Below are positions 1 through 62,002 of a stretch of 64,000 nucleotides of DNA, piece by piece (position 1 is the first letter of the stretch; each line of letters begins with the position of its first letter). A model generated the notes under the pieces. That model did no database searches. It was given only the letters and a program-made list of their open reading frames with translations, and was not told the origin of the DNA. Position numbers and translations under genes: made by a program. Source of the DNA: Mobula hypostoma (Eukaryota); assembly GCF_963921235.1 (NCBI RefSeq), contig NC_086124.1:24118001-24182000 (forward strand), written 5' to 3'.

Positions 1-335
1 GATGCAGGAAGATTGTTCCCGATGTTGGGGAAGTCCAGAACGAGGGGTCACAGTTTGAGGATAAAGGGGAAGCCTTTTAGGACCGAGATGAAGAAAAACT
101 TCTTCACACAGAGAGTGGTGAATCTGTGGAATTCTCTGCCACAGGAAACAGTTGAGGCCAGTTCATTGGCTATATTTAAGAGGGGGTTAGATATGGCCCT
201 TGTGGCTAAAGGGATCAGGGGGTATGGAGAGAAGGCAGGTACAAGGTTCTGAGTTGGATGATCAGCCATAATCATACTGAATGGTGCTGCAGGCTCGAAG
301 GGCTGAATGGCCTACTCCTGCACCTATTTTCTATG
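1..335 (+). mobile_element. CR1 LINE 3' end (end of ORF2 and 3' UTR)
   Basis: ORF 13-252 (RGHSLRIKG...FFTQRVVNLWNSLP) is the typical CR1 ORF2 C-terminus, followed by the ggcctactcctgcacct...ctatg tail. Confidence 0.9.
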
Positions 336-2940
336 AAAATGGTTATATGGAACCTTGGAGATTTTTGAATCCATCAGTTAGGCAATTCTCTTTCTTTTCT
401 CATGTTCACCACTCCTATTCCAGGCTACACTACTATTGCTTTATAGATAGCTCCTTGATACCAATGATTAGACAAATTGAGTACACTGCTATAGTTATAT
501 CTGATCACTTGCCCGTGAAACTGGACCTATGTTTTCCTTTAAACATTAGAGAACAGCCTCTGTGGCGACTTAATCCCCTTTTGCTTTCCAATGAGAAATG
601 TTATAATTATATATCGGCTAACATTGACACATTCTTCGAGACCAACAAAACTGAGTCGGTATCGTACTCTTTACTTTGGGAAACTTTAAAAGCTTACTTG
701 AGGGGTCAAATAATATCTTATACCTCACATGCCAATAAAGAGCATAGGAAGGAAATGCAAGTGTTATCGCAATCTATTTTGGACCTGGATAGGCAATATT
801 CTGAGGCACCCAGTGCGGAATTACATAAAAGCAGGGCTGATTTGCAAGCGAAGTTTAATCTTCTCTCTACAAACCTATCTGAACAATTAATTCTTAAGAG
901 ACGTGGCCTCTATTATGAATATGGTGACAGGGGGAGCCGGCTTATGGGAGAGTCAAGCTGCATCACGACTTATTCCCCAGATAAGAGACACGCGCCAAAG
1001 CTTGACAAGCAATCCAAAAGAGATTAATAACATCTTTGCAACTTTTTATTCCTCTCTGTATACCTCAGAGTTTCCATCAGATATAATGAATATGGAACAT
1101 TTTTTTGATAATTTGGAAATACCAAAGGAACCAGAGGAGGTGGAGAATTTAGATCGGGCTCTTGGGGCAGGAAGAGATTAATAATGCCATTATGGCTATG
1201 CAGAGTGGTAAGTCCCCAGGTCCTGATGGTTATCCAATAGAATTTTATAAGAAATTTAAGGATAAGCTCATACCGGTCCTTCTGGAAGTGTTTCAGGAAT
1301 CTTTGGAGAATGGTTCCTTACCCCCTACTCTTTCACAGGCATCTATTTCACTTCTTCTTAAAAAGGACAAGGACCCGACTCAATGTGGATCATATCGCCC
1401 CATCTCACTTTTGAATGTGGATGTGAAAATTTTGGCTAAAGTGCTTGCGCGCCGTTTAGAACGTCCCCTTCCCAAGATAATCTCAGATGATCAAACAGGT
1501 TTCATTAAAAATTGCCATTCTTTTTTTAATATCCGTCAACTGGCTGACGTGGTTTATTCGCCCAGTGATTCTCTGAGTCCGCAGGTTGTTATTTCCTTGG
1601 GCACGGAGAAGGCATTTGATAGAGTGAAGTGGGTATACTTGTTTAGTGTTTTGGAGAAACTTGGATTTGGCAGAATATTTGTAGCCTGCGTTAAGCTATT
1701 ATATCACTTGCCTTTAGCATATATACAGACAAATTATTCTCGATCTGACTATTCCCCATTAATACATGGCAGTCACCAAGGCTGCCCATTGTTCCCTCTT
1801 CTTTTTGCAATTGCAATTGAGCCTCTTTCTATTGCACTTTAAGTCAACTACATTATTTCAAGGTGTTAGGAGAGGGAACGTGGAACACCGTGTATCCCTA
1901 TATGCTGATGACCTCTTACTTTACGTTAGCGTCCCTGCAGGTAGCAGTCCTGCTATTGTGTCATTATTAGGTCAATTTGGAGCCTTCTATGACTATAAAC
2001 TGAACCTTCAAAAAAGCAAATGATTTCCCATTAATAACTTGGCCCTAGAGATCCGACAGGAATCTTTGCCTTTTCCTGTATCTCAAGATAGTTTTGTATA
2101 CCTAGGAATGCACATTACTTGCTCTTTTACATCTCTGTTTGAAGCTAATTACAGGTCTCAGGTTAGCCAAATGAAGGCTGATTTTGAAAGATGGCGCAGT
2201 TTACCCCTTACTATAGCTGGGAGAATTCAATCGGTGAAAATGACTATACTTCCCAGATTTCTTTATTTGTTCCAGTGCTTGCCAATTTTCTTATCTAAGT
2301 TATCCTTCAAATCGGTCAGCCAAAGTATAACCTCCTTTATTTGGGAAAATAAGGTCCCAAGGGTTAATGAGAGCACTCTCCAAAGAGGTCGTGACGTAAG
2401 TAGAATGGGTCTTTCTAGCTTTATTCATTATTACTGGGCATCAAACATTCAAAAGGTATTATTTTGGCTCCACCGGCCAGATATAAACTGGTGCCCACTT
2501 GGGACATGGTCTTGCCACTCCTCGTCTCTCCCAGCTTTAGTGCATTCTTCCTTACCATTGAAATCCTCTCAATTCACATCTAACTCAGTCATGCTCTCCA
2601 CCGTCAAAATTTTTAATCAATTTCGCTCCACTGTAAGTTCACATCAGCTTCAGTTTTGGGTCCCATTCATAGAAACCATCTACTTCTTCCCTCCACAATC
2701 AATTCATTTTTGCGACAATGGGGTTTGAACGGTCTTATGCGCATTAAGGATTTGTACACTGATAACATATTGATAGTTTTGATAACCTGTGCAGTAAATA
2801 TAGCCTTCCGCATAATCATTTTTTTAATACCTGCAGATTCGCCACTTTGTCAAGGAAAAATTTCCCTCTTTTCTTCGTCTACCACCTGCTATGTTGTGGG
2901 GAAAAACTCATTCTTAGCTTTAATAATAAAGGGCTGATCT
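336..2940 (+). mobile_element. Degenerate L1-clade LINE ORF2 (endonuclease end, RT)
   Basis: Frameshifted ORFs carry SDH..WRLN (APE end), KSPGPDGYPIEFYK, YRPISLLNVDVKILAKVLA, GCPL and LYADDLLLY. Confidence 0.9.
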
Positions 2941-3374: not shown

Positions 3375-3880
3375 CTTTGAAAACAAAACTTTAATTCCAC
3401 TTCCCACTCCCATGCCATGGCCTCCTCTTCTTTCAAGATGAGGCCGCACTCAGGTTGGAGGAGTAACATCTTATATTCCACATGGGTAGCCTCCAACCTG
3501 ATTGCATGAACCTTGATTTCTTGAACTTCCAGTAATGCCCCCCCCCCCACTTCATCATTCCCCATTCCCTTTTCCCTCTCTCACCTTACCTGCACATCAC
3601 CTCCCTCTGGTGCTTCCCCCCTTTCTTTCTTCCATGCCCTTCTGTCCTTTCCTATCAGATTCCTCCTCCTCCAGTCCTGCACCTCTTTTCCCAATCAACT
3701 TCCCAGCTCCTTACTTCACCCCTCTCCACCTCCTAACTCTGACTCCTCAACTTGTTTCTCCAGTCCTGATGAATGGTCTCAGTCCGAAACGTCGTCTGTA
3801 CTCTTTTCCATAGATACTGCCTGGCCTGCTGAGCTCCTCCAGCACTTTGTGTGTGCTGCTTGGATTTCCAGCATCTGCAA
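3375..3880 (+). mobile_element. Penelope-like element 3' fragment with hammerhead motif
   Basis: Degenerate GIY-YIG end, pyrimidine tract, CTGATGA..GAAACGTC at 3766-3793, and the gctgcctggcctgctg tail shared with the other copies. Confidence 0.85.
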
Positions 3881-3907
3881 ATTTTTTTTTGTGAAAATAA
3901 ACTTTAC

Positions 3908-4159
3908 CCGTCAGAGCTTGAACAACCAGGTGAACGATCTCCATGGCATGTTATTAACATAGTGGGCAACATTTCTGATAACCTTTCGATTGCAGGTTCA
4001 GATCGTCCACGAAAGACTTCACAATTGGATTGATGGCCACAAACTTTCCTGTTGTATAATTAAAGCGAACGGCCGTTTCTCCATTGTAAGCAAACTGCAG
4101 GGTAGCCATTGAGAACTCTGAACCTTTACCAGAGAAAGTCACTTGACCGATGTGCATTC
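3908..4159 (-). pseudogene. MHC-fold peptide-groove-like exon (class I alpha2 / class II beta1-like) with two in-frame stops
   Basis: Acceptor ttcgcttgccag|GA at 4160/4159, donor G|GTAAAG at 3908/3907, 252 nt, phase 1-1. Translation GMHIGQVTF...QFAYNGETAVRFNYTTGKFVA...DDLN matches by eye the GSHxxQ, QFAYDG and VRFD..G.F.A motifs. TAA TAA at 3951-3956. Confidence 0.55.
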
Positions 4160-4369
4160 CTGGCAAGCGAATAATAATCGATCCGTTAACCATTTATGAG
4201 AGTGAAATGGCTCATTTTAAAACTTTAAAATTAATCAACCTGAAAGAACAAATTTGTCTCTCCCTTCTGTGGATACCTCACCATTCTGACGGCAACAGGT
4301 GCCACTCCTCCAGAGCCACCTCTCCCTCCCACCGTAAAACTCCAATAGCTGGGATTTGGTGGTGGTGCT

Positions 4370-5335
4370 GCTGACCCTTCACCCTCACTCTCTGCACCCA
4401 CCTCTTCCTCAGTTCGATGCCCACGTCCCCACCCATCTCTTCGCCCAAACCCCTCCTCGCCATCGAAGTGCCCTTCCCTCAACACCTCTCCCCACAGACA
4501 TCTCTCCTCACCGTCCACACCCAACTCTCCACCCACCCCCTCTCTCCCTACCCACCCTCAGTGACTACTTCCCTCCCCAAACATCCTTGGCAGTCCCTCC
4601 CCACCCACTCACCCATGGCCCCCTCCCAATCTCAGTGCCCTCTATCCTCCCCACTCTCTGCACCCCCACAACTCCACTCCTCAGCCTTCCGTCCCACACT
4701 TAGCACCCCTCTCCCTCCCCACACACCTTTGGCACCCTAATTCCTTCCCCACACAACCATCCCCAGTGACCCCTTCTCTTCCACCACCCCCTCAACAAGA
4801 CTCAATTCACCTTCACTCCCTCTCTACCTGCTCTCTCTCTCAGTGCCTCCTTCCCTTCCCGTGCCCATTCAATGCCCTCTCCCCTCTCCTTTGGAACACC
4901 CCCCATCCCATGGTGCCCACTCCACTACCCTCCATTGGCGCCCGCTCCTCCCCACCTTCCCTTGGCCGCTCCTCCCCACCTTCCCTTGGCACCCCCTCCC
5001 ACCTTCCATTGGCACCCTTCCCCTCAGCTCTCCACCCTCCTTTGGTGCTCACTCCCCACCCTGCCTCAATGTCACTCCCCTCTCCTCCCCACCCTCCATC
5101 GGTGGCCATTCCCCTCCCCTCTTAACTCTCCCTCAGTTCTCCTCCCCACCCTCCCTTGGTGCTACTCTCTCCACCTTCCTTCAGCGAGGTCTCCCTTTCC
5201 CTCCTGACCTTTACCTTCCCCTCCCTCCCTAGTTGCCCTCTTCCCTCTCTTGCCCACCCTCCCTCAGTGTCCCCACCCCCCTCTACCTCCCTACGGTCCA
5301 TCGGTGCCCCCTCCCATCCCTGGGGCGCTGCGCTC
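4370..5335. repeat. C/T-rich low-complexity tract with degenerate 22-24 bp repeats
   Basis: Nearly G-free on the + strand; cgctcctccccaccttcccttggc repeated around 4940-5030. Confidence 0.85.
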
Positions 5336-5670
5336 CTCACCCAGGGCAGTGGAGCCGTTGAGGAGGAGGAGGAAGGCGGCGAGCAGAGAGGGAGAGCGGC
5401 GTCGCCTCACGCCGGCCGGCGGCTCCTGAGACAGCGGGAGGAGCAGCTGGCTCACGGTTCGCGGAGACGGCATCATTCCCCACATCCCTTTCGCCGAAGG
5501 CTGAGGACCTGGTCACACAGCCTCTACGCGCGAAACCGATCGCCAGCCGGCAGGTCCCGTAACGGGAGGCGATCGATGTAGAAGTTTCCCCGGCTGAGTG
5601 GACGGCTGCTGCCACAGACAGGCGGGGCGAGGCGGGAGGGAACGCCTTCTGTTTCCATATGGCGCTTTAT
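5320..5670 (-). promoter_or_regulatory. CpG island / promoter
   Basis: High CpG density; GC box ggggcgaggcggg (~5625), YY1-like atggcg (~5660) and kB-like gaagtttcccc (5581-5591). Confidence 0.6.
5341..5485 (-). CDS. Candidate leader (signal peptide) exon of the MHC-like gene
   Basis: MWGMMPSPRTVSQLLLPLSQEPPAGVRRRRSPSLLAAFLLLLNGSTAL+G: basic stretch, hydrophobic core, phase-1 donor G|GTGAGG, inside a CpG island, and phase-compatible with exon 3908-4159. Confidence 0.55.
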
Positions 5671-5704: not shown

Positions 5705-6345
5705 GATTGGGATACCAGCTGAGAGGAGCGTGGATGGGGTCGGGTAATAACAGGTGACGGGGTGGTAGGTGTGTGGGTGCGACACCAGGTGAGGGGGGAG
5801 GCAGGTGTGTGGGTGGAACACCAGGTGAGGGGGAGGTAGGTGTGTGGGTGAGATACCAGGTGAGGGGGAGGTAGGTGTGTGGGTGGGGCACCAGGTGACG
5901 GGGAGGTAGGTGTGTGGGTGGGATACCAGGGGAGGGGGAGGTAGGTTGGTGGGTGGGATACCAGGTGAGGGGGAGGTAGGTGTGTGGGTGGGATACCAGG
6001 TGAGCGGGAGGTAGGTGTGTGGGTGGGATACCAGGGGAGGGGGAGGTAGGTTGGTGGGTGGGATACCAGGTGAGGGGGAGGTAGGTGTGTGGGTGGGATA
6101 CCAGGTGAGCGGGAGGTAGGTGTGTGGGTGGGACACCAGCTGAGGCTGGGATGCCAGGTGAGAAGGGAGGTGGGTGGGTGTAATACCAGGCGAGGGGGAG
6201 GTGGAATGGGGGGAAAGCAGGTGAGGGGGAAGGTGAGTGGATGGGATACCAGTTGAGCAATAAGGTGGGTGATAGGGGGAGGGAGTATACCAGGTGAGAG
6301 GGACTGTGTTTGTGTGTGTGGAGGGGGGCTACCAGGTAAGAGGGG
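5705..6345 (+). repeat. G-rich minisatellite, ~35-bp unit
   Basis: Unit ataccaggtgagggggaggtaggtgtgtgggtggg, about 10-11 well-conserved copies at 5770-6140 with degenerate flanks. Confidence 0.9.
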
Positions 6346-6419
6346 ATAGCAGGTGTTTGGATGGTAGACAGGTGGGTAGTGGATGGGGATATGCCAGATG
6401 AAGGGGAAGGTGTGAGTTT

Positions 6420-6745
6420 GCTTCATTTTCCATTCCTATCAGATTCCTTCTTCTTCAGCCTTAACCTCTTCCACCAATCACCTTCCAGCTTCTTATCCCA
6501 AAACCTCAACCCATCCCACCCACCTTCCCCCTCTCCTGGTCTCACCTATCACCTGCAAGCATGTACACCTTCCCCTCCTCCCACCTTCTCATTCTGGCTT
6601 CCCCCACCCACCACCCCCCCCCACCTTCCTTTCCAGTTCTGATGAAGGTTCTCGGTGTGAGACATTGATTGTCCATTTCCCTCTCTAGACATTGCCTGAC
6701 CTGATGGGTTCCTCTGGCAGTTTGTGTGTCTTACATTTATGTAGC
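6420..6745 (+). mobile_element. Old Penelope-like 3' tail fragment
   Basis: ctgatgaaggttctcgg..gagac remnant and gcctgacctg tail. Confidence 0.65.
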
Positions 6746-11420: not shown

Positions 11421-12929
11421 TGTACTCTTAAATATTTATCACTAAATAAACAATAAACCTACACTTAACAATAATCAACCAATTTACCAATTTCGAAGTG
11501 GAAGAAAGATGGCAAGCCACACTATATATTACATAAATTTCCAGTTCCATCCTCCATAAATTTGCATATTTTAAATTCTGTGCATTCTTTGGGGAGATGA
11601 GGAACTTAACTCAGCTTTGGGGAAGTTTCACATGGGAGGTCTCGTGTTGGCTCTGTGCCCAAGACACAAAATTATATTCTGCAGCACACTGAAATGCACT
11701 GAACCTGACCTGGGGGATTTCTCAAGATAGTGTTCCTTTGTTCAACCAGGAAGTAGTCTCATTTAAATATCCTTACAACCAACTAGTCTGGATTATCCAC
11801 ATAACAATAATTTTTTGAGCGGAGAGCGGCAGTTAACTCAATAAAATCTGGTTTTTTTTCTATCATATGTCCCTTGTTCAAGGTTCAAAGTAGATGTATT
11901 ATTAAAGTACATATATGTCACCATATAGAACTCTGAGATTCATTTCCTTGTGGACATACGTACATAGTAAATCCAATGTGTCACCAGTGTTCCGGATTCT
12001 TCTCTGAGAACCCATGAGTCCAAAATTTAAGTGTAGAAAAGTAGCATCACATACTTATGTCCATTTGGGAGGGTAACCCCCAAAAGTTTATAAAACTGGA
12101 AAAATGGGAGCCCTATAAGGGTCTTGGCCCAAAACATCAACTCTTATTACTGTAGCCCCTGAGTTCTTCTGGCATTTTGTGTGTGTTACTCAAAAGTGGA
12201 AAATACTGGATTTTCCTCTGGCCAGGCTAAGGATTCAGTGTGACTCTGGTCTGACGTCCTGGGTAAAACACTAAGCAGAGAAAAGATTATGAGATGACTC
12301 ATGCATGAATATTATGAATAACAGGAAGGGTAAATGCAACAGATTTAAATAAAGTAGGAGGAACGTCTACTGAACTTCATTTGGAAGAGCCTTTCTGCCC
12401 CAGTGTTTCATGTGGTTTGGACTGGGTATTTCAAAGTTCAGATTTCAAAGTAAAGCTCACTATCAGAGTACACACGTCACCGTATACAACCCTGAGATTC
12501 TTTATCTGTGGGCATACTTCACTCTAACAGTCGTGAGCATACGGTGAGCTCGGATGCCAATTTCACTAGACTGCAGCTTGCAAGCATTTAGTGCGGGCGG
12601 GGCGCTCGAAAATGTGCAGCCCGTAGCATATGCTAGTTTTGCTACTAGGTTAGTCCGGCCCTTTGTGCACTCTCTCGTTGGAAACTCTCCTGAACAAATT
12701 TGACAAACTCTATCCCATCTCATCCTTTTACAGTATGGGAGTCCCAGTCAATATGTGCAAAGTTAAAACTATCTATATTATGTTTCTTGCAATAGCCTGT
12801 GACCTCTCTACAGATTTGTTCCTCTGCATCCCTCGGACTGTTGGGTGGTCTGTAATATAGTCCCATTATCGTGGTCAGACCTTTCTCATTTCTCAGTTCC
12901 ACCCACAACACCTCACCAGATGAGTTCTC

Positions 12930-13229
12930 CAGTGAAGCCAATCCCGAGACCGGCGAGTCGGCACCTGTCAGAGACTGCGCGTGCGCTCGTCATCCGGCCG
13001 CCCGCCGCTGATTGGCTGCCGCGGCTTCCCGCCAGAGACCCCCCCCGCCCTCTCTCCGGCGCGTGACTCCGCCGGCGGCCGGGCTGCTCCCTCGCTCTAT
13101 TCGGCGTTGAGGAGCGGAGGAGCGGGGCTGGGACTGGGGCTGGGGCGGTACGTTGGGCGGGGAGGTCGCCTCCTCCTGCCTCCTGCATCTTATCTCCAGC
13201 CGCTCTTTGCTTTTGGCACAGTCGCAACC
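12930..13229 (+). promoter_or_regulatory. CpG-island promoter, copy 1
   Basis: gccaat (~12937), CGTCA 12988-12992, CTGATTGGCT 13008-13017, NRF1-like tgcgcgtgcgc and GC boxes. Confidence 0.65.
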
Positions 13230-13305
13230 ATGGGTCGATATTGCACTGCCTGGGCGCTCCTCCTGCTCCTCGTCGCTCGTTCGGGGACCCACAGCTCGGC
13301 GGCCG
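13230..13305 (+). CDS. Signal-peptide exon, copy 1
   Basis: gcaaccATGG Kozak; MGRYCTAWALLLLLVARSGTHSSAA+G; phase-1 donor GTGAGT at 13306. Confidence 0.7.
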
Positions 13306-14622
13306 GTGAGTTGATTTCTGTCGCGGGGATCACCCTTCTTGCTGCAGACTGTGGGATCTTGTGGAGTTTACCGGACTTTTCTACCTTCTTCCCAATGGGA
13401 GGGGTGTGTGGCATCTCCAAGGGGCATAAATTCGGTGAAGGCAGATAGCCCTTTTTTCCAGTATAGGGGATTCAAGAACTAGAGGACAAAAGTTTAGCTA
13501 AGAGGGGAGAAATAGGAACCTGAGGGACTACTTTTCCACAGAAAATGTGGTTCATATTTGGAACCAGCTGCCAGAGTTTGGGATGGAATGGTTGAGGTAG
13601 GTATATTGACAATGTTGAAAATACGTCTGGACAGCTACATAGGCATAAGACACGGGAGCAGAATTAGGTCATTCAGTCCATCGAGACTGTTCCACCATCT
13701 ATTATTAGCTCTGTTATTTTCTGAACCCCATTCTCCTGTTTCCTCCCATAACATTTGATGCCCTTTCTGATGAAGAATCTATCAATCTCTGCTTTAAATA
13801 TACCCAATGACTATGCCACCACATCCAACTGTGGCAATGCATTCCATCAGCTGCAACATGTTCCAGCAAAAGAAACTTCTCCTCACCTCTGACTTAAAGC
13901 CTCCTATTCTGAGGTTGTGACCCCTGGTGCTATTGGAAACTCTCTCTCCACGGCCACTCTATCCTGCCCTTTCGATATTCCATAGGTTTCAATGAGAATC
14001 CCCACCCCAATCGTTCTTCTAAGCTCCAGGCCAAGAGCCATCAAATGCTACATGGATGGGAAAGGTTAACGGGGAGATGGAGCAAACATTACAAATTGGA
14101 TTAGCTTAGATGGAAACCTGGGTCAGCACAGACCAGTTGGGCAGAAGAACCTGTTGTCATACTGTATGACTCTATAATATTCTGAAAGATGAGGAAGGGA
14201 GAAGACAAGTTAGGTCTTCAGTGAAGCTTGGGACAAGCAGTTCGGTCATTTTGGGAGAGGCCGCTGTGAGAGTGGGTCCTTGTGTAGGCTTCAGCATGAA
14301 GAAGCTTAGTGCATGGCCCAGGTTCTTGGTGCGAGGGCAGGAACTTTAGAAAGAGAAGTCTCATTGATTGACCAATTGCAGGACGGAACAAAATAAATTA
14401 TTCCAAAACACTCAGCAAGTGAAATACATAACACAGTTGTTAAAAACAAGACCCTAAATAGTAGAGTGGCAATGTATGCATTTTGCTCTGGAAACACTGA
14501 CGTCATTTTGTTGTAGAATTGGATCTATTTTCTCAGACTTAAGTGCAGGACAAAATAAATGATTCCAAAGCACTCAACACTAACTTAGCTGATATGGTAG
14601 TTTTCTTATACAATGGGATCTT

Positions 14623-31300: not shown

Positions 31301-32166
31301 CATCTCCATGAACATCAAAATACTCTGTCAACTTAGCTGTTTTTGTTATCACAAGTTGGTCTCTTCTTTCTTTTTCTTCTTTTGCTTTACGTTTTGCACT
31401 TCCAGAAGCATGATAACATACAATATCTCTGGCTCTATTGCTCATTGCCATCTACATGAAGACAGCATTGCCAGATCGTCGTCATGTGGCGTGGATGAAA
31501 TCACAGAGAGTTGCATTACCAGTAGGTAAAAGGCCGTTTCTTTATTCGACAAAACTAGGTCACAGCAGGCAAAGACACCTGGCAGAACATGTCTAACCAT
31601 CTTGTGATTGAGGCTCGATATTTATTTGCTAAATACAAAGAACAGTTCATTGTTACAAGTATAGACAATTCTTTGAAGTTTACACATCTTTTGATTAAAT
31701 TCATTCTACCGGCACCAGCATGCCTAAGCTGGTATTCATGGCCTTTAGGAATGCAAGTTAAAATCCATAGTACATTATTTGGTATGTTACGTGCTACCAT
31801 AGAGGACAATTCATATTCAAAAAAAGCATAGATATGGTGTGTTTGCAACGAGCTGTAAACTTTGCATTCTTGTGCCAGAGATGCATTGTTACAAATGAAA
31901 CTGGGTTCACAGCTATTAGGAAATGCATTGTTCTCAACTCAGTCTACAGTACTCTGCAAAGAACAGAAGGCTGATGGCTGAAGTCATTTATTTAAGTGTA
32001 CATGAATCGTTTACCGAAAAATCTCTCTAACAGTCGTAAGAATACTGTGAGCTCAGATGCCAATTTCACCAGACTGCAGCTTGCAAGCATTTAGTGTGGG
32101 CAGGGCCCTCGAAAATGTGGGGCCCATAGAATATGCTACTTTTGCTAGTAGGTTAATCCAGCCCTG
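28331..32166 (-). mobile_element. hAT DNA transposon (TTF-type zinc finger / DUF4371 type), degenerate
   Basis: TIRs CAGGGCCGGATTAA / TTAATCCAGCCCTG; flanks tgtgcagt / tgcgcact (tgtgcact in the duplicate); WLCY..SKGSLFCFPC, DSTPDIS..DQL, YDNASNMSG and hATC remnants. Confidence 0.88.
30320..31165 (+). mobile_element. Penelope-like GIY-YIG 3' fragment inserted in the hAT
   Basis: ORF 30422-30772 VIYSVQCSRCGLLYIGETQRRLGDRLAEH...IFRLGSLQPDG; mutated hammerhead near 31070-31105. Confidence 0.9.
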
Positions 32167-32429
32167 TGCGCACTCTGTCGTTGGAAACTCTCCTAAACAA
32201 ATTTGACGAACTCTATCCCATCTCATCCTTTTACAGTATGGGAGTCCCAGTCAATATGTGCAAAGTTAAAACCATCTACATTATGTTTCTTGCAATAGCC
32301 TGTGATCTCTCTACAGATTTGTTCCTCTGCATCCCTCGGACTGTTGGGTGGTCTGTAATATTATTGTGGTCATACCTTTCTTATTTCTCAGTTCCACCCA
32401 TAACACCTCACTAGATGAGTTCTCTGGTG

Positions 32430-32733
32430 AAGCCAATCCGAGACCCGGCGAGTCGGCACCTGCCAGAGACTGCGCGCGCGCTCTCGTCATCCGGCCGCCC
32501 TCCACTGATTGGCTGCCGCGGCTTCCCGCCAGAGACACCCCCCCCGCCCCGCCCTCTCTCCGGCGCGTGACTCCGCCGGTGGCCGGGCCGCTCCCTCACT
32601 CTATTCGGCGTTGCCAGAAGTGGAGGAGTGAAGCTGGGGCTGGGACTAGGGCGGTACGGTGGGCGGGGAGAATGGCGGGGGTGTCGACGACTCCTGCCTC
32701 CAGCCGCTCTTTGCTTTTGGCTCAGTCGCAACC
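32430..32733 (+). promoter_or_regulatory. CpG-island promoter, copy 2
   Basis: gccaat, CGTCA 32485-32489, CTGATTGGCT from 32505 and GC boxes; paralogous to 12930-13229. Confidence 0.65.
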
Positions 32734-32809
32734 ATGGGTCGATATTGCACTGCCTGGGCGCTCCTCCTGCTCCTCGTCGCTCGTTTGGGGACTCACAGCT
32801 CGGCGGCCG
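32734..32809 (+). CDS. Signal-peptide exon, copy 2 (candidate exon 1 of the SRCR gene)
   Basis: gcaaccATGG; MGRYCTAWALLLLLVARLGTHSSAA+G; donor GTGAGT at 32810; phase matches the SRCR exons. Confidence 0.7.
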
Positions 32810-33815
32810 GTGAGTTGATTCCTGTCGCGGGGATCACTGCTGTTGCTGCAGATTGTAGGATCTTGCGGAGTTTGCATTGCTGGGGTCATCAACCTGGTCG
32901 GGGGTGAGCTATTACGGTTTGGATCTTGCTGGCCCCATACTATTTTGGGTCTTGTTGTTTAGGGGTTAAACTACTTGGTGAGACCACACTTGGAGTATTG
33001 TGTTCAGTTCTGGTCGCTTCATTACAGAGCCAAGTTTAATATCAGGATATTTAAATTGGGATGTGGAAGCTTTAGAGAGTATGCTGAGGAGGTTTACCAG
33101 GGTTAGAGAGCATGTCTTGTGAGTTGAGCATGCTCGGGATTTGCTCTTTGAAGCGAAGGAGCATGAGAGGTGACTTAACAAAGATGTACAAGATGAGAGG
33201 CATTGATAGGGTGGATAGTGGAAAGCTTTGTCCTAGGGTGGCAATAGCTAACATAAAGGGGCATAACTTTAAGTAGAGGAGGAATGTCAGAGGTAGTATA
33301 TTTAGGTGTGGAACCTGGCACTGCCAAGGTTGTCATGAAAGACATTTAGGAGACTCTTATAGGCACAGAGGTAACAGAATAATGGAGGCTTCTGTGTGAG
33401 GGAAGGGTTAGATTGATCAAAGGGTTGGCACAACAATATGGACCGAAGAGCTGGTACTGCAATCTACTGTTCTATGCACATGGTTGCTGGGATCTTGCTG
33501 TGGGCACGCAGGGATGGGGAGGGAGGAGTTGTGTAGTGGAATCTTGCTGTGCACTTGGGTGGGGGCTGTGCTATGGATTGAATGGGAATTTGTTTGATTG
33601 TGCCTTGCCCGTATTGCATGAACGCTTACCACGTGCAGACTGGATGGGGATTGTTGTAGTGTTACAGACTTGTACAACACACAACTGGACCCTTTTGCCC
33701 ACCATGTGTTTGCTGACGTTTTTGCCCATCTACGCTAATCCCACCCTTCTCCCCCCCCCACCCACAGACACACACATTAGGACCATATCCTGGTGTTAAA
33801 TGTACTTTGAATATA

Positions 33816-48780: not shown

Positions 48781-50870
48781 TGATTTGCAATGAAATACAA
48801 AGCCTTTGAGTACAGTATTCACAACCTGTTTATATTCTGCATCCTAATGCAATGATACTAGCCCTGCTTTCTGCATTTTGCCCGATCATCAGCATCTCCT
48901 TCCTAACAATCTAACTGCCTGCTACTTTTGTTGTTTTAACACCTTTCATATCCTGAGTCCCTTTACTCTGTTTCCCATCTCCATGCTGAATTAGTGACAA
49001 CCCTCCCAAACAGCTCGAACAAACCAATGTGAGAGAATATTTGTCCATCTCGGGGTCATGTGCAATGTGCAGGTCACCCCTCCTCAATTTTGATTTCCAG
49101 CATCTGCAGATCTTTTTTCCTGTTTGTGAAATGAATGTGCTTCACTATGGCTGTTCCTTAGCAGCTTGGACTGAGAAAATGTAAAAAATATGACCATAAT
49201 AGTAAATAAGTAAAAAATACCGAAAAGATGTGGTGAGGAAGTGAGAGGTCCTTGAAATCTTGTCACAGGTTGTGGTAACAGTTCAGTGAAGGGGTAAGTG
49301 AAGTTGTGAGGTTATACCTTTTGGTTCAAGAGCCTTGTGCTTGAGGGGTAATTACTGTCCTGATCCTGATGGTATGAGTTTTGAGGGTGTTATACCTTCT
49401 TCCTGATGGCAGCAGCAAAAAGAGAGCATGACCTGAGTGATGGTTTGCCTGGTGAAGGATGCTGCTTTCTTGCGACAGCACACAGTATTGATGTGCTCAA
49501 TGCAGAAAACAGTTTTATTCCTGATGGACTTGGCCATATATACTGCTTTTTGTAGGAATTTCCCTTTAAGGATATTGGTGCTCCTTTCCAGAAGGTAATG
49601 CATTCGGTTATTATACGTTCCATCACACAAGGATGGAAATTCGTTCAAGTTTCAGATTTGATGCAAGGAATGCATCGGTCAGGACTGAATTCTTTGCAGG
49701 TAGAGGATCGAGGCAAGATTTGAGGGAAGTGTAACGCTCCGGTTCAGTCGGCGACGTAAGTCGAGGGAAGATAATCTCTGGCCCCGCCAAATGTGTGAAC
49801 TTTGAGTTGCAAAACCTCTTATTTGTGTGGATGCTGTGTGGTTTGTTCCCCTGTTACAAATCAGTACCACAGAATATTGGACTGTACACCATATACAATT
49901 AAATGATTTAGCTGTTTAATTCTTCATCGGACTAAAGTGTTAGTAAGGAAAAACAAAATGAAAAGAGCCCATTTTAATGAAACAGGCTAATGTGTGCAAG
50001 TTGCAGTTCACGGTTTCCCTTCTGCTGGTCCTCAGTCGATTTCTCTGGCCGTCATCGACTACTGGCCCCACTCCAAGGCCACTACTTTCTGGTGTCTACG
50101 AATTCTCCTTTCTGGCATCTTCTCTCTCCATCTTTTGCCGATAACAAAACCCAGATTACCTCGGTGGCAGCCATACAGCATGAAAATACACCTCCCGCAT
50201 TGGACGGCCAGCAACTCTAACCATAACCCAAACACTGCTTCTACAGAAAGACCATGACATTAGCAGTGAAACTTTTCCCAGGGTGTTACTCTTTCCCCTC
50301 CCTCCCCCCACCAAATTTAGTGAGGTCCTCATGACATTGAAATAATTTACCAGCCCTGTATGCAAAGAACAAAGTTCAACCCAGGTGTAAAAGGCAGTGA
50401 CATAGATCCTCTGAATGATCTCCTCACTGTCCCGTACAAGCTGAAGTTCTTGCAGCTGCTGCTCCCGATCCATAGCACAGTCTTGCAGTATCTGCAGCTG
50501 GATGCACCTCACGCACATGTAGTCTCCCATGGGGCTCCCAAGACACCAACATCAGGAGTGAATAACCCGCAAAGGCCTTTTAAACTATAGTAAGTATAAT
50601 TGACACAATAAGAGGAAAGAGAAACATAACAAACTCAAACAGACAAGTTACCCAGAGCCAGTGCCACTTCCGTGCCGATGACTCCTTTGAGCCAGTGCTT
50701 GACAATATACTTCCTCCTGCAGCCCGTCCCAACGATCAGCGCTGCAACAATGCTGGCTCCACTTCCGCAAGCATTCACATGCTGTGTTATGGCCAGGAGC
50801 CTGGAATTGAAGATGCCTGTAAGAGGAATTCTGAAAAATACAGTAATTTCTTCTTTGAATGTCATTCCAG

Positions 50871-51182
50871 AGCCCAATATAAGGCTGGTAGGCGGCAGCG
50901 ATCGTTGTTCAGGGAGAGTGGAGGTGTGGCACAGTGCACAGTGGGGAACGGTATGCGACGATGGATGGGACACTGACGACGCCAAGGTTGTCTGCAATGA
51001 GCTGGGCTGTCCCCCTGCCACAGCAGCAATACAGGGGGCACACTTCGGGCAAGGCAGCGGGAATATCTGGATGGATGATGTTGCGTGCAATGGAAATGAA
51101 TCCGCCCTTGACGAATGTTCCTTTGGAGGATGGGGGATTCATAACTGCGGTCACGGAGAGGATGCAGGAGTGAATTGTACAG
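50871..51182 (+). CDS. Group B SRCR domain exon A (DMBT1/CD163-like protein)
   Basis: ttccag|AG acceptor, G|GTCAGC donor, 312 nt, open frame, 8 Cys, [31 protein letters not shown]. Confidence 0.92.
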
Positions 51183-51600
51183 GTCAGCATAGAAGAAAGA
51201 ACCTCTTTGTTTCTGCTTTCTCTCTATTGGGATTAAGAAAGACTCTACTTTTATAATTATGCCAGCCACTCTTGTTGCTGTGGGTAAAACAATGAAAATT
51301 TATGTATTCATGCTTGACGTTGTTGAGGCAGGTACAACTTAATTAACATTTTTTCTGCATCACTTAAAATGTTGGAGTGTTTCATTTGGCAAATTTTGAT
51401 GTCCTAGTTGGTCGTGCATACGGGTGCTGATTCCAGCTTCATTTTGGATAAGACATAACACATCAGAGAATATAAGGATTGACTGGTAATTTATCTGTAT
51501 TCAGAACAGTGAATTGTAACTATTTATTAACGGCATTTCGTTAGTTTTCTGGGGTGGACGTAAGAACTCTATTACATAAACTACATGTAAACATTTAGGG

Positions 51601-52604: not shown

Positions 52605-54497
52605 CTTTAGGCTGTTCTGCACAAGAACTCCCAAATCCCTTTGCATCTCAGATGTTTTGATTTTACTCTGCTTAGAAAATAGTGTGCCGAATTATTTCTA
52701 CTGATGAAGTGCAAGACCATGCATTTTCCAACATTGTATTTAATTTGCCTTTTCCATGCCAATACTCCCAAACTGTCTAAGTCCATCTGAATCTCTCTCT
52801 TTTGAGTTCTATTACCAACCTAATTTTCCCAATCTACCTGCATATTAAAATTTCCCCTTACTATCATAATATTTCCCATTTGGTACACCATTTCTATTTC
52901 TGTTTTATTCTGCACTCTACATTTCAGTTACTGTTCCGTGAGCTGCATCTACTGCCACAGGGTCCATTTCCATTGCAGTGTCCTTACTGAACTGACAAGG
53001 ATTCAACATCTTCCGATCCAATGTCATATCTTTCTCAGTATTTGATGCCATTCTCTAACAGCAGAGCGATGCCATGCACCCAGCCTATGTTCATACCCTT
53101 TGGATACAATGTACAATGGAAATTATGCTACCCACCAAACAGTCTTTCAGCAACGAAGTGGTGATGTCCACAAGATCGTATGTGACAATCTGTAAAAGCG
53201 CCGTGTTGTTGTGCTCAATAGATGTTGAGAACAGTATTGAACCCTTTTTGATTCTGCATCCCTCATCACTGATACTCGCTCTGCTGGTAGTTTTTTCTTG
53301 TTTTATCATCTGGCCAACTTTCCTACCAGACTGACTGCGTGCTGTCTTTTCTCTTTTACCATCCGCGCTGTCCTGACCCCATTCCCTTCGGTTTCCACCC
53401 CCTTGCAAAATTAGTTTGAACTCTCCCCAATAGCTCTAAGAAGCCAGTGAGCGAGAAGGTTGGTTCCCATCGGCTTCAGCTGCAACCCTTCCCTTCTTAC
53501 AGGTCATGCCTCCCCGAGAAGAGATCCGAATGATCCAAGAACCTGAAGCACTTCACTCCCTGCTGCAAATTGTCAGCCACGCATTTATCTGCCAAATCAT
53601 TCTGTTTCTACCATCCCTGGCACGTGACACAGGCAGTAATCCTGAATGTGTTGCGTCTCAGCATTCCGTCCAGCTCTTTAAGTCCTCATTGCGGAACCTC
53701 TTTGTACCAAGATTTCAGGCTGCTTTCCCTCCCACTGCTCAATGCTATGGACGCAATCCGAGTCCATAGCACCTGGGAGGGAGCAACAGACCATCCGTGT
53801 GTCCCGTTCACGTCAACAAACTTTTTTTTCGATTCCTCTGACTATTGAGCCTTCCATCTCAACCGCTCACGACTCTCCCTCTTTCCTTTCTGCAATCCAT
53901 GGTCAGTGCAACCCACCTGGTCTCCGTGACATTCTGCTGAGAGGTTATTTTAAAAAATAGTATCCAAAATAATACACTTAGTATTCAGGGAATTTACCCA
54001 AGAGCTGCTGTGAGCTAATTGCCTATTCACTGTCTAATTCCTTTCCTAACAGTCACTCATTTATTAGACTCCTGCAGCTCTGATGGATGATCTCCTCACT
54101 CTTCCGTGGAAGCCGAAGGTCTTGCAACCGCTGCTACCGATCCATCGCACGGTCTTGCAGTATCTGCAGCTGGACGCACCTCACATACATGTAGTTGCCT
54201 GTGAGGCTCCCAAGACAACATCTAACGTGAATAGCACGCAATTGCCTTCTAAACTACACTAAGTACCCTCCTCATGTTACCCAGTGCCAGTGCCTCTTCT
54301 GTGCTGAAGACTCCTTTGAGCCAATGCCTGACAATCCACTTTAACCACTGGCCTCTCCCAACAGTCAATGCTGCAACAATGGTGGCTCCTCTTGTGCAAA
54401 CATTCACATGCTGTGTAATGGATAGGAACGTGGAACTGAATATATCTGAAGCGAATCTCCAAAAAATACAGTAATTTCTCTTTCAATGTCATTCCAG

Positions 54498-54812
54498 TGC
54501 CTGAAGTAAGGCTGGTAGGCGGCAGCGATCGTTGTTCAGGGAGAGTGGAGGTGCGGTACAATGCACAGTGGGGAACGGTATGTGACGATGGATGGGGCAC
54601 TGAAGACGCCAAGGTTGTCTGCAATGAGTTGGGTTGTCCCTCTGCTGCAGCAGCAGTCTCGGGGGCACGGTTCGGGCAAGGCAGCGGAAATATCTGGATG
54701 GACGATGTTGCATGCAATGGAAATGAATCTGCCCTTTGGGAATGTTCCTTCCGAGGATGGGGGAGTCATAACTGCGGTCACGGAGAGGATGCAGGAGTGA
54801 TTTGTTCAAAAG
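54498..54812 (+). CDS. Group B SRCR domain exon B
   Basis: ttccag|TG acceptor, G|GTAGGC donor, 315 nt, open frame, 8 Cys. Confidence 0.92.
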
Positions 54813-57800
54813 GTAGGCATAGAACAAAGAACATCTTTGTTTCTGATTCCTGTCTATTGGGATTAACAAAGACTCTATATTAGTAGTTAGGCCAGCCACT
54901 CTGGTTGCCGTGGGTAAAACGATGAGAATTTTTGTGCTTATATTTGATGTTGTTGAGGCAGGCACAATTTAATTAACATTTGTTCTGCATTGCTTAAAGT
55001 GCTGGAGTGTTTCATTTGGCAAACTGTTATCTTATAGTTGGTCGTGCAGACTGGTGCTGATTCCAGATTCGTTTCGGGTTAGATGTATCAGATCATAAAG
55101 TATAAGGAATGTCCGGTAATAACTCTGTATGCAGTGAATTGTAACTATTTGTTAACGGCATTTCGTTAGCTTTCTGGGGTTCACATAGGAACTCCATTTC
55201 ATAAACTGCATATAAATCTTTAAGGTGCTCTGCAGAAGAACTTCCAAGTCCCTTTGCATCTCAGATGTTTGGATTTCACTCTTGTTGAGAAAATAGTTTG
55301 CAGAAGTATTTCCACCGATGAAGTGCAAGACCATGCATTCTCCAGCATTGTATTTAATTTGCCGCTTCAGTGCCCATTCTGCAAAACTATATAAGTCCTT
55401 CTGAATTCACACTCTTTTCAGTTCTATTTCCAACCTAATTTTCCCAATCTACCTGCATGTTAAAATTTCCCCGTAGTATCATAACATTTCCCTTTTGGTA
55501 GGCCATTTCTGTTTCTGTTGTATTCTGTAGCCTACATTCCAGTTACTGTTTGGAGAGCTGCAGAAACTGCCATCAGGGTCATTTTCTATTGCAGTTTTGT
55601 TACGCAATCGACAAGAATTCAACTTCGTACAATCCTATGTCACACTTTTCTCAGTAGTTGAGACCATTGTCTGACAGCAGAGCGATGCAGCCTATGTTTG
55701 TCCCCTTTCAATAAAATGTACAATGGAAATTCAGCTACCCAGCAAACAATCTTTCAGCAACAAATTGGTGATGTCCACAAGATCATACATGACAATTTGT
55801 AAAAGTACAGTAAGATCATCCAGCTTATTTCTTATGTTCTTTTCAATGAGATACAAGGCTGCTATAGTGCTTCCAAACTTTTTTTTATTCTGCATCCTAA
55901 TGCACAGATGATACTCACTCTGCTGGCTGAATTTTGTCCGATCATGTGGTTGCCCTTCCTAACAGTCTGACTGCCCGCTACTTTTGTTGTTTTAATACCT
56001 TTCGTATCCTGAGACCCTTCACGCAGTTCCTATCCCCATGCTAAATTACTTCTGACCCTCCCCAAGAGTTCTAACAAACCAGCCCGAGAGAATATTTGCC
56101 CAAGTGCAACCCCTCCCTTTTGTACAGGTCATCCCTCCTCTATTTGGATTTCCCGCATCTGCAGATTTTTTTTTCCTGTTTGTGAAATGAATGTGCTTGT
56201 CTATGGCCGTACCTTAGCAGCTTGAACTGAGAAAATATAAAAAATACGACCGTAATAGTAAATAAGTAATAAATACCAAAAAGATGTGGTGAGGAAGTGA
56301 GAGGTCCTTGAAATCTTGTCAAAGGTTGTGGCAACAGTTCAGTGAACGGGTAAGTGAAGTTGACTGGTTGTACCCTTTGGTTCAAGAGCCTTGTGCTTGA
56401 GGGGTAATTACTGTCCTGATCCTGATGGTATAAGTTTTGAGGGTCTTATACCTTCTGCCTGATGGCAGCAGCAAAAAGAGAGCATGACCTGGGTGATGGT
56501 TCGCCTGGCGAAGGATGCTGCTTTCTTGCGACATCACACAGTGTTGATGTGCTCAATGGAGAAAACAGTTTTATTCCTGATGGACTTGGCCATATATACT
56601 GCTTTTCGTAGGAATTTCCCTTTAAGGATATTGGTGCTCCTTACCTGAACGTAATGCATTCAGTTATTATACGTTCCACCACAAAAGGATAGAAATTCGT
56701 TCAAGTTTCAGATCTGATGCAAGGAATACATCGGTTGGGACTACATTCTTTGCAGGTAGAAGATTGAGGCAAGATTTGAGGGAAGTGTAACCCTCAGGTT
56801 CAGTCAGCGACGTAACTCGAGGTAAGATAATCTCTGGCCCCGCCTAATGTGTGAACTTTGAGGTGCAAAACCTCTTGTTTGAGTGGATGCTGTGTGGTTT
56901 GTTCCCCTGTTACAAATCAGTACCACAGAAGAATGGACTGTATACCATATGCAATTAAATGGTTTAGCTCTTTGATTCTTCATTGGACTAAAGTGTTAGT
57001 AAAGAAAAACAAAAAGAAAGGAGCCATTTTAATGAAACAGTCCAATGTGTGCAAGTTGGAGTTCACGGATTCCCTTCTGCTGGTCCTCCATCGATTTCTC
57101 TGTCCATCATCAACTACTGTCCCCACTCCAAGGCCACTACTTTCTGATGTCTACGAACTCTAATTTCTGGCATCTTCTCTCTCCATCTTTTGCCGACAAC
57201 AAAACCCAGATTACCTCGGTCGCAGGCACAGAGCATGAAAGTACACCTCCCGCATTGGACGGCCAGCAACTCTAACCATAACCCAAGCACTGCTTCTACA
57301 GAAAGACCATGACATTAGCAGTGAAACTTTTCCCAGGGTGTTACTCTTTCCCCACCCTCCCCCCACCAAATTTAGTGATGTCCTCATGACATTGAGATAA
57401 TTTACCAACCCTGCATGCAAAGAACAAAGTTCAACCCAGGTGTAAAAGGCAGTGACATAGATCCTCTGAATGATCTCCTCACTCTCCCGTACATGCTGAA
57501 GTTCTTGCAGCTGCTGCTCCCGATCCATAGCACAGTCTTGCAGTATCTGCAGCTGGATGCACCTCACGCACATGTAGTCTCCCATGGGGCTCCCAGGACT
57601 CCAACATTAGGAGTGAATAACCCGTAGAAGCCTTTTAAACTACACTAAGTATGCCTGACACAACAAGAGGAAAGAGAAACATAACGAACTCAAACAGACA
57701 AGTTACCCAGAGCCAGTGCCACTTCCGTGCCGACGACTCCTTTGAGCCAGTGCTTGACAATCTACTTCCTCCTGTAGCCCGTCCCAAAAATCAGCGCTCC

Positions 57801-57925
57801 AACAATGCTGGCTCCGCTTGTGCAAGCATTCACACGTTGTGTTATGGCCAGGAACATGGAATTGAACATACCTGTAAGCGAAACTCTGAAAAATACAGTA
57901 ATTTCTTCTTTGAATGTCATTCCAG

Positions 57926-58237
57926 AGCCCAATATCAGGCTGGTAGGCGGCAGCGATCGTTGTTCCGGGAGAGTGGAGGTGTGGCACAGTGCACAATGGG
58001 GAACGGTATGCGACGATGGATGGGACACTGATGACGCCAAGGTTATCTGCAGTCAGTTGGGCTGTCCCCCTGCCGCAGCAGCAATACAGGGGGCACACTT
58101 CGGGCAAGGCAGCGGGAATATCTGGATGGATGATGTTGCGTGCAATGGAAATGAATCCGCCCTTGAAGAATGTTCCTTTGGAGGATGGGGGAGTCATAAC
58201 TGCAATCACGGAGAGGATGCAGGAGTGAATTGTACAG
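57926..58237 (+). CDS. Group B SRCR domain exon A'
   Basis: 312 nt, phase 1-1, open frame, 13 nt differences from exon A. Confidence 0.92.
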
Positions 58238-58655
58238 GTCAGCATAGAAGAAAGAACCTCTTTGTTTCTGCTTTCTCTCTATTGCGATTAAGAAAGACTC
58301 TACTTTTATAATTATGCCAGCCACTCTAGTTGCTGTGGGTAAAACAATGAAAATGTATGTATTGATGCTTGACGTTGTTGAGGCAGGCGCAACTTAACTA
58401 ACATTTTTTCTGCGTCAGTTAAAATGCTGGAGTGTTGAATTTGGCAAATTTTGATGTCCTAGTTGGTCGTGCATACGGGTGCTGATTCCAGCTTCATATA
58501 GGATAAGACATATCACATCAGAGAATATAAGGATTGACTCGTAATTTATCTGTATTCAAAACAGTGAATTGTAACTATTTATTAACGGCATTTCGTTAGT
58601 TTTCTGGGGTGGACGTAAGAACTCTATTTCATAAACTACATATAAACCTTTAGGG

Positions 58656-61690: not shown

Positions 61691-62002
61691 AGCCCGAAAT
61701 AAGGCTGGTAGGCGGCAGCGATCGTTGTTCAGGGAGAGTGGAGGTGCGGTACAATGCACAGTGGGGAACGGTATGTGACGATGGATGGGGCACTGAAGAC
61801 GCCAAGGTTGTCTGCAATGAGTTGGGTTGTCCCTCTGCTGCAGCAGCAATATCGGGGGCACACTTCGGGCAAGGCAACGGGAATATCTGGATGGATGATG
61901 TTGCGTGCAATGGAAATGAATCCGCCCTTTGGGAATGTTCCTTCCGAGGATGGGGGAGTCATAACTGCGGTCACGGAGAGGATGCAGGAGTGAATTGTAG
62001 AG
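61691..62002 (+). CDS. Group B SRCR domain exon B' (A/B mosaic)
   Basis: 312 nt, phase 1-1, open frame, 8 Cys, A-type donor GTCAGC. Confidence 0.92.

What the first reader, a model, noticed from the sequence alone, without database searches (positions are those of the whole stretch)
3908..5485. Divergent MHC-fold gene: leader exon followed directly by a class I alpha2-like groove exon (class II-type layout, class I-type motifs)
Seen: a phase-1 leader exon (5341-5485) and a 252-nt phase-1/1 exon reading GMHIGQVTFSGKGSEFSMATLQFAYNGETAVRFNYTTGKFVAINPIVKSFVDDLNLQSK. By eye this aligns with class I alpha2 (GSHTIQRMY..QFAYDG) and class II beta1 (YN.EE.VRFDS..G.F.A....W N). It keeps the Q96, A117 and G120 equivalents used for beta2m contact in class I, but has T at the D122 position and lacks the groove Cys pair and conserved Trp residues. 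No alpha1 exon lies between the two exons, only a C/T tract. Established: class II-type chain organisation with class I interdomain motifs defines the W-category MHC described in cartilaginous fish. Inference: this may be a WB-like chain or another highly divergent MHC-like lineage. Its Ig/TM exons would lie left of the window.
Basis: partly seen in the sequence, partly recalled or inferred. Interest (0 to 1): 0.8.

Follow-up and report, generated by a model that had tools for sequence, protein, structure and literature searches.

The report
Broken W-category MHC beta gene
This is the start of a devil-ray gene from the known "W-category" MHC beta-chain family, but two small indels break its groove exon, so it is most likely a transcribed, decaying duplicate and not a new kind of MHC gene.

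Summary
The two exons are real. The leader (5485-5341, minus strand) is spliced directly to the next exon at 4159 in RNA contigs of four runs (GT..AG).

The family is the published W-category beta chain, WB_DS1-like lineage. The nearest non-ray relatives are sequences that Okamura et al. 2021 name great white shark and little skate WB_DS1-like. RefSeq already annotates the gene, as "class II beta chain-like" (XP_062891232, -234 and -235).

This copy is damaged. Compared with an expressed intact paralog, the 252-nt exon has +1 nt near 3994 and -7 nt at 3944/3945. About 50 nt are out of frame, with TAA TAA at 3956-3951. One RNA contig matches the broken sequence exactly, so it is not an assembly error.

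RefSeq keeps an open frame only by using a weak, copy-specific GT at 3982. That leaves 59 residues of beta1 without the long helix, and none of the three isoforms has a transmembrane region.

Best reading: a transcribed, decaying duplicate. The scan found W-category genes before on other DNA of this genome (s1-141866, s1-141920, s1-141797).

The parts
5486..5606 (-). 5' untranslated part of exon 1
   Evidence: RNA contigs in X3, X4 and X9 end at 5601-5606. They differ from the window at only 2 of about 267 positions over the leader and UTR. The X1 contig runs on past 5650.
5341..5485 (-). Leader (signal peptide) coding part of exon 1, phase 1 at its end
   Evidence: Translation. It is 49/49 identical to the RefSeq Mobula hypostoma WB_DS1-like products. 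The donor is CTGG|GTGAGG.
4160..5340 (-). Intron 1 (1181 nt, GT..AG), a degenerate purine-rich repeat on this strand
   Evidence: A joint 5340/4158 skipping 1181 nt is present in contigs of X1, X3, X4 and X9. RNA depth is zero across the intron apart from one low-depth X1 contig at 4807-4966.
3908..4159 (-). Beta1 (membrane-distal, groove) exon of 252 nt. The intact paralog's exon is 258 nt.
   Evidence: Contigs of the intact paralog align from 4158 to exactly 3908. The donor is ACGG|GTAAAG. Pfam MHC_II_beta matches the first 59 residues.
3945..3994 (-). Out-of-frame segment between a +1 insertion (about 3994) and a 7-nt deletion (between 3945 and 3944). It holds TAA TAA at 3956-3951.
   Evidence: Indels are listed, table 4. 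Applying them and the listed substitutions gives the RefSeq paralog's beta1 for 79 of its first 81 residues; the last two listed differences (LV for QA near the exon's end) were not recovered. The shifted frame still reads the ancestral helix (VIRNVAHYVNNMPW against LIRNVARYVNDMPF).
3981..3982 (-). GT used as the donor in the RefSeq models of this gene, so their exon ends at 3983. It is weak (AAAG|GTTATC) and specific to this copy.
   Evidence: P0034, P0020 and P0035 read ...LNLQSK then the beta2 domain. The intact paralog has C where the window has the G of this GT (3982, table 3). The X1 contig runs through this site unspliced (record 4).
3765..3897 (.). Interspersed repeat (SINE-like) just downstream of the beta1 donor
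   Evidence: Thousands of RNA contigs at 90-95% likeness, with summed depth up to about 1e5 (table 2).
281..2934 (+). LINE-type retrotransposon ORFs filling most of intron 2 inside the window (read by eye as endonuclease/reverse-transcriptase-like; no family search was run on them)
   Evidence: Long + strand ORFs. tblastn found no beta2 or TM exon anywhere in the window.

Best explanation
The stretch holds the promoter-proximal part, the leader exon and the beta1 (groove) exon of a W-category MHC beta-chain gene of the WB_DS1-like lineage. The genome is a devil ray, Mobula hypostoma or a very close relative. The gene is one of at least five recent paralogs on this chromosome. Transcription runs leftwards, and the leader is spliced directly to the beta1 exon, as in class II beta and WB genes. 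The Ig (beta2) exon lies beyond the left edge of the window.

This copy has a 1-nt insertion and a 7-nt deletion in the beta1 exon. These put the start of the long alpha-helix out of frame and create two stop codons. The full-length exon is still transcribed. The only open reading uses a weak GT created by a substitution in this copy. It yields a protein with the four beta1 strands and the first short helix, then beta2, then unrelated tails without a membrane anchor.

The most likely status is a transcribed, decaying duplicate (an expressed pseudogene), not a working groove-bearing chain.

Shown: family, exon structure, splice, indels, transcription. Inferred: loss of function.
For: **Family**
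- The 59-residue exon finds a 291-aa Mobula protein at 86% identity (E 1.6e-24), and shark proteins P0004 and P0005 at 41-43% (E about 5e-6), in 1.8 billion proteins.
- The beta2 of the thorny skate relative P0026 equals their little skate WB_DS1-like row.
- P0001 against P0013: 45% identity over 239 aa, E 1e-74.
- Q6, A32 and G35 are present. The LPNxDGTFQ motif has no Trp and lies in register with the shark WB_DS1-like sequence.
- The best solved-structure matches are MR1 and class I alpha2-alpha3 (E 9e-25), then class II beta (E 5e-20).
- The AF2 model of the intact paralog has four strands, two helices, an Ig domain and a TM helix. The top Foldseek hits are class II beta chains, E 1e-13.

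**Splice**
- A GT..AG joint 5340/4158 is present in four runs.

**Damage**
- Stops at 3956-3951. Indels relative to the expressed paralog.
- X1 record 4 is identical to the window over 3922-4055. It includes both indels and the stops, and it runs through the 3983 site.
- The RefSeq isoforms X1-X3 of this gene carry 59 beta1 residues and three different tails without a TM.
- The conserved GFYP motif reads GSYP in this copy's beta2.
Against: - The gene is transcribed and correctly spliced at intron 1. Its leader and beta2 reading frames are intact, and RefSeq models an open reading frame, so a short product cannot be excluded.
- The RNA data are assembled contigs, not reads. Use of the 3983 donor could not be counted, and a loose end there may be hidden among rows that were not shown.
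- The X1 contig joined to the leader differs from the window at five clustered sites (4061-4076). The broken exon seen in RNA may therefore be an allele, or another copy sharing the same indels.
- The exons to the left of the window could not be read here.
Confidence: 0.72

Rival explanations
1. The gene is functional in the short form that RefSeq models. In this reading it makes a secreted or otherwise anchorless chain with the beta1 sheet strands, no long helix and an intact Ig domain, and that chain has some new role.
For: - Three RefSeq isoforms share the 59-residue beta1 part joined to beta2.
- The leader and beta2 are open, and the locus is transcribed.
Against: - The donor GT is weak (GTTATC) and arose by a substitution in this copy only.
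- The only window-identical RNA contig reads straight through it into the stops.
- The three tails are unrelated to each other and to the family's CP/TM/CY region.
- The AF2 model and Pfam place the lost part in the long helix, which makes up half of the groove wall.
Confidence: 0.12
2. The frameshifts are assembly errors, and the gene is an intact WB_DS1-like gene.
For: A 1-nt indel is a common error type, and the net change (-6 nt) restores the frame.
Against: - An independent short-read RNA contig (X1 record 4, 134 nt, depth 31) is identical to the window across both indels.
- A second X1 contig shares the 7-nt deletion.
Confidence: 0.03
3. It is a conventional class II beta gene (classical or non-classical), or a lineage outside the W-category.
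For: - Pfam MHC_II_beta is the only groove model above its cutoff.
- RefSeq names the proteins class II beta-like.
- The top Foldseek hits are class II beta chains.
Against: - The nearest named relatives are published WB_DS1-like sequences.
- The family has G, not the Trp that is invariant in class II beta2, plus the class I-type Pro four residues before it.
- There is no beta1 Cys pair.
- The best sequence matches among solved structures are class I-type.
Confidence: 0.03

Closest known systems
W-category MHC beta chain, WB_DS1-like lineage (Okamura et al. 2021, PMC8713811; great white shark, catshark and little skate members)
   Same: - Leader, beta1, beta2 layout.
- Q6, A32, G35 in beta1, and no beta1 Cys pair in the shark or Mobula members.
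- LPNxDGTFQ in beta2, with P57 and G61 instead of Trp.
- 41-45% identity to the white shark member. The skate relative's beta2 is identical to the published little skate row over the 48 columns held.
   Different: - Position 37 is T here (V, T or A in the Mobula paralogs). Sharks and skates have E, and class I has D.
- This copy has a frameshifted beta1 exon and no TM exon in its annotated products.
- Its head-to-head neighbour is an SRCR gene, not an ordinary WA gene.
RefSeq Mobula hypostoma XP_062891232/234/235 ('DLA class II histocompatibility antigen, DR-1 beta chain-like' isoforms X1-X3)
   Same: These are the annotation of this very gene. The leader and the 59 beta1 residues are identical to the window.
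   Different: RefSeq names it class II and models a shortened beta1 exon. RNA contigs show the full 252-nt exon with its stops.
Paralog XP_062891129-132 (isoforms X1-X4; P0036, P0011, P0015, P0001)
   Same: The leader peptide is identical. Beta1 is 86% identical over the first 58 residues. The exon boundaries are the same, and the gene is expressed in X3, X4 and X9.
   Different: Its beta1 exon is intact at 258 nt, and it has TM and cytoplasmic regions. Of 14 listed substitutions against the window, 12 change the residue.
Banded houndshark WB_DS1_n2, called a possible pseudogene, with read-through fusion transcripts, in the same paper's supplement
   Same: It is a damaged but transcribed extra copy of a WB_DS1 gene.
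   Different: The species and the lesions differ, and details were not compared here.
Conventional MHC class II beta chains and class I heavy chains (alpha2-alpha3)
   Same: The fold matches: four strands plus helices, then a C1-set Ig domain. The exon layout is that of class II beta. The contact residues are class I-like.
   Different: It has no W61 and no beta1 disulfide, unlike class II. It has no alpha1 exon, unlike class I.

Membership tests
W-category beta chain (WB) | Class II-type chain layout: the leader exon is spliced directly to a single membrane-distal domain exon | tested here: met
   A GT..AG joint 5340/4158 is present in contigs of four RNA runs, and no exon lies in between.
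W-category beta chain (WB) | Class I-type beta1 residues Q6, A32 and G35 (numbering of Dataset S1) | tested here: met
   GMHIGQ... and ...QFAYNGE... are in register with the published WB_DS1 rows.
W-category beta chain (WB) | Acidic residue at beta1 position 37 (D in class I, E in shark and skate WB_DS1) | tested here: not met
   T in the window; V, T or A in Mobula paralogs P0001, P0015 and P0018; E in P0021, P0023, P0026 and sharks.
W-category beta chain (WB) | Beta2 without the class II-invariant W61 (mostly G61), and with P57 | tested here: met
   The RefSeq product of this gene reads LPNQDGTFQ, in the same alignment columns as white shark WB_DS1-like LPNTDGTFQ. The exon itself lies outside the window.
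W-category beta chain (WB) | The nearest relatives are sequences published as WB | tested here: met
W-category beta chain (WB) | Connecting peptide, TM and cytoplasmic region of the beta-chain type | tested here: not met
   Paralogs have it (VYGYVIGIIAGIIGIL...). The three RefSeq isoforms of this gene end in unrelated tails, and no TM exon lies in the window.
W-category beta chain (WB) | Head-to-head pairing with a WA gene | tested here: inconclusive
The divergent neighbour is a 2164-aa SRCR gene, with SRCR exons in the window. I did not test whether this neighbour's leader is WA-derived.
W-category beta chain (WB) | Forms a heterodimer with a WA chain | not testable with these tools
   No WA partner sequence was in hand, and the product is truncated.
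Conventional MHC class II beta | Invariant W61 in beta2 and the beta1 disulfide pair | tested here: not met
   G at that place. No Cys in the window's beta1 reading.
Conventional MHC class II beta | Pfam MHC_II_beta match above the gathering score | tested here: met
   22.0 bits against 20.9 for the 59 residues, covering profile positions 10-53 of 75 only. 24.3 bits for the intact paralog.
MHC class I heavy chain | An alpha1 exon between the leader and the alpha2-like exon | tested here: not met
   Direct leader-to-groove-exon junction. Pfam MHC_I reaches only E 0.13.

The most novel reading that the evidence does not exclude
The short, anchorless form is a real product: a secreted 'half-groove' W-category chain with the beta1 sheet strands and an Ig domain but no long helix and no membrane anchor. 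It would be made from a copy whose groove exon was remodelled by two indels and a newly created splice donor.
Probability: 0.08. Interest if true: 0.55.

Novelty: new member of a known kind. Interest (0 to 1): 0.22.

Why it matters
- It removes the suggestion of a new MHC lineage. The gene family was described in 2021, this gene is already in RefSeq under a class II name, and this copy is damaged.
- It is a case where an automatic gene model hides a frameshift behind an unsupported splice site.
- It adds one data point to a recent, locally expanded WB_DS1-like family in devil rays. In that family the groove exon is by far the most divergent part among copies.

Tried and rejected
- **Spurious matches.** phmmer of the 59 residues against solved structures gave only designed or bacterial beta-propeller repeats (Cake, PQQ). 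Each repeat scored about 2 bits, so these are not meaningful. The same kind of hits (P0002, P0003, P0006-P0010) appeared in the representative search.
- **No flanking DNA.** The look-up of encoding contigs returned gene spans but no DNA because the sample file is too large. It returned nothing for the shorter isoforms. The beta2 exon and the region left of the window therefore could not be read.
- **Run labels.** Both run searches listed no run on record as RNA. The runs nevertheless proved to hold spliced contigs.
- **Supplement limits.** Datasets S1 and S2 of the paper are stored cut at column 48, so positions 57 and 61 could not be read from them. I used the register with the published white shark sequence instead.
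- **No formal tree.** The word-based homology search from the white shark protein reached only DS1-like genes. No tree with WB_DS3 or WB_Nds5 was built, and I did not type sequences from the OCR text.
- **Literature.** No paper on Mobula MHC was found in the held library.
- **Other.** One mistyped literature query and one over-long supplement query failed. No complex prediction was attempted.

Full report
**1. What is in the sequence**

On the minus strand an ATG at 5485 opens a 145-nt coding stretch that ends at a GT donor (CTGG|GTGAGG) after 5341. An acceptor AG at 4161-4160 precedes an exon that starts at 4159.

That extent is right, since a good donor (ACGG|GTAAAG) follows 3908. But the frame is not open. 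After the 59 residues it runs into TAA TAA at 3956-3951.

The 1181-nt intron is a degenerate purine-rich repeat on this strand. tblastn with full-length relatives finds only these two exons in the 64-kb window, with no Ig or TM exon. Downstream lie an interspersed repeat (3765-3897) and LINE-type ORFs on the + strand (281-2934), which I read by eye and did not test with a family search.

**2. Is it more than chance?**

Yes. The 59 residues reach Pfam MHC_II_beta at E 1.9e-4, which is 22.0 bits against a cutoff of 20.9. They cover profile positions 10-53 of 75, that is the strands and the start of the helix. MHC_I reaches only E 0.13.

A full HMMER pass over 1.8 billion representatives gave three relevant hits:
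- a 291-aa protein at 86% identity (E 1.6e-24)
- two shark proteins at 41-43% identity (E about 5e-6)

The remaining hits are bacterial repeat proteins with per-repeat scores near zero, and I discard them.

**3. Which family?**

The 291-aa hit is RefSeq XP_062891132, Mobula hypostoma, "class II histocompatibility antigen, A beta chain-like". The shark hits fall in a cluster with XP_041035565 of the great white shark. That sequence is printed in the supplement of Okamura et al. [quoted passage not shown]

The beta2 of the thorny skate relative equals the paper's little skate WB_DS1-like row over the 48 columns held. The catshark relative sits on the 159-kb contig that the paper names. The intact Mobula paralog and the white shark WB_DS1-like protein are 45% identical over 239 residues (E 1e-74).

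The diagnostic residues the paper gives are present:
- Q6, A32 and G35 in the window's beta1, in the register of Dataset S1
- LPNQDGTFQ in the beta2 of this gene's RefSeq product, which means Pro four residues before a Gly where conventional class II beta has an invariant Trp

Among solved structures the best sequence matches are MR1 and class I alpha2-alpha3 (E 9e-25), followed by class II beta (E 5e-20). An AF2 model of the intact paralog has mean pLDDT 63, with the domains at 73-84. It shows four strands, a short and a long helix, a seven-strand Ig domain and a TM helix. Foldseek puts class II beta chains on top (E 1e-13).

So the layout is class II-type with class I-like contacts. That is the definition of the W-category, and the lineage is WB_DS1-like.

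**4. RNA evidence**

The four runs holding the leader are not on record as RNA. They contain spliced contigs and almost no intron signal, so they are RNA. All four carry a joint from 5340 to 4158 with GT..AG ends on the minus strand. The leader is therefore joined directly to the groove exon, and no alpha1-type exon intervenes.

In X3, X4 and X9 the contig over the groove exon differs from the window in three ways:
- one base fewer at 3994
- seven bases more after 3944
- 14-16 substitutions

Applying these changes gives a 258-nt exon. Its translation equals the RefSeq paralog's beta1 except for two residues near the exon's end, which were not among the listed differences. Those runs therefore show the intact paralog, laid on the window at 90% likeness.

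In X1, a 134-nt contig (record 4, depth 31) is identical to the window from 3922 to 4055. It includes both indels and the two stops, and it runs straight through the GT at 3982. A sister contig (record 5) shares the 7-nt deletion but has other 1-nt changes, and it is also broken.

The lesions are therefore real, not assembly errors, and the broken exon is transcribed in its full-length form.

One caveat applies. The X1 contig that joins the leader differs from the window at five clustered sites (4061-4076, reading EVAVCFD for ETAVRFN). The transcribed broken exon may thus be an allele of this gene, or another copy with the same indels.

**5. What the annotation does**

The window's own gene is RefSeq XP_062891232, -234 and -235 (isoforms X1-X3, 243, 235 and 228 aa). 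All three read the leader and the same 59 residues, then jump from 3983 to the beta2 exon.

The GT they use is weak (AAAG|GTTATC). Its G at 3982 is a C in the intact paralog, so the site is new in this copy.

After beta2 the three isoforms end in three unrelated tails with no hydrophobic anchor. The paralogs carry a conserved VYGYVIGIIAGIIGIL segment at that place. The conserved GFYP of beta2 reads GSYP in this copy.

The gene span is 31.5 kb. Unchecked scan notes place a beta2 exon followed by another beta1 exon, with no TM exon, 4-13 kb left of the window (s1-143382). They place a frameshifted beta1 relic 21 kb left (s1-144943). This fits a fragmentary duplicated array.

**6. Interpretation**

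The family call and the exon structure are shown. That this copy no longer makes a groove-bearing chain is inferred from four observations:
- the stops in the transcribed exon
- the non-conserved cryptic donor
- the loss of the long helix in the only open reading (the helix spans residues 106-134 of the model of the paralog)
- the missing anchor

I put 0.72 on [quoted passage not shown]. I put about 0.12 on a functional short form. An assembly error or a non-W class II gene each get a few percent.

**7. Novelty**

The W-category was described in 2021, and WB_DS1-like was already reported from a skate. A possibly pseudogenic, transcribed WB_DS1 copy was noted in the houndshark. This gene is in RefSeq under a class II name, and the scan has already followed up W-category genes 3.5-3.8 Mb away in this genome. 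No paper on Mobula MHC was found in the held library. This is a further, damaged member of a known kind.

Noticed in passing
window 12519-13445 (+), and exons at 50630-51253, 54440-54880, 57778-58308 and 61633-62073 (+): Head-to-head with the WB gene lies a large SRCR gene (2164 aa in RefSeq). A signal-peptide-like ORF sits near 13.2 kb, and four near-identical SRCR-domain exons lie in the window. A WA gene would be expected at this place. I did not test whether this leader is WA-derived.
   Followed up: partly
window 12519-13369 and 32022-32873: The promoter and leader region of the SRCR gene is duplicated at 88% identity 19.5 kb downstream. No second WB leader or beta1 copy accompanies it.
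   Followed up: partly
window 5705-6420: A minisatellite of about 35 bp, with 11-16 copies, lies directly upstream of the WB transcription start. It recalls the 36-base array next to an MHC control module noted elsewhere in this genome (s1-141964). The sequences were not compared.
   Followed up: no
outside the window: RefSeq XP_062891129-132 of Mobula hypostoma (P0036, P0011, P0015, P0001): One RefSeq gene has two alternative leader-plus-beta1 modules. Their leaders are identical and their beta1 parts are 75% identical. The modules start more than 10 kb apart. In the models their CP/TM/cytoplasmic parts are identical (62/62), while beta2 is only 81/94 identical. This may be read-through splicing in a tandem array of partial duplicates, or true alternative first-exon cassettes. 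The latter would be unusual for an MHC gene.
   Followed up: partly
window 3908-4159 against the RNA contigs of X3, X4 and X9: Of 14 listed substitutions between this exon and the intact paralog, 12 change the residue and 2 do not. Among the Mobula paralogs the leader is 100% identical, beta1 64-75% and beta2 86-90%. The groove exon diverges far faster than the rest. This fits either diversifying selection or relaxed constraint.
   Followed up: partly
window 3922-4158, run X1: X1 holds no contig of the intact paralog type, but it holds two different broken versions of the 3' half of the exon. X3, X4 and X9 hold only the intact type. This could reflect different animals (haplotypes or copy number) or different tissues. 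The samples are coded, so I could not tell.
   Followed up: no
window 3765-3897: A short interspersed repeat right after the beta1 donor is among the most abundant sequences in all four RNA runs, with summed contig depth up to about 1e5.
   Followed up: no
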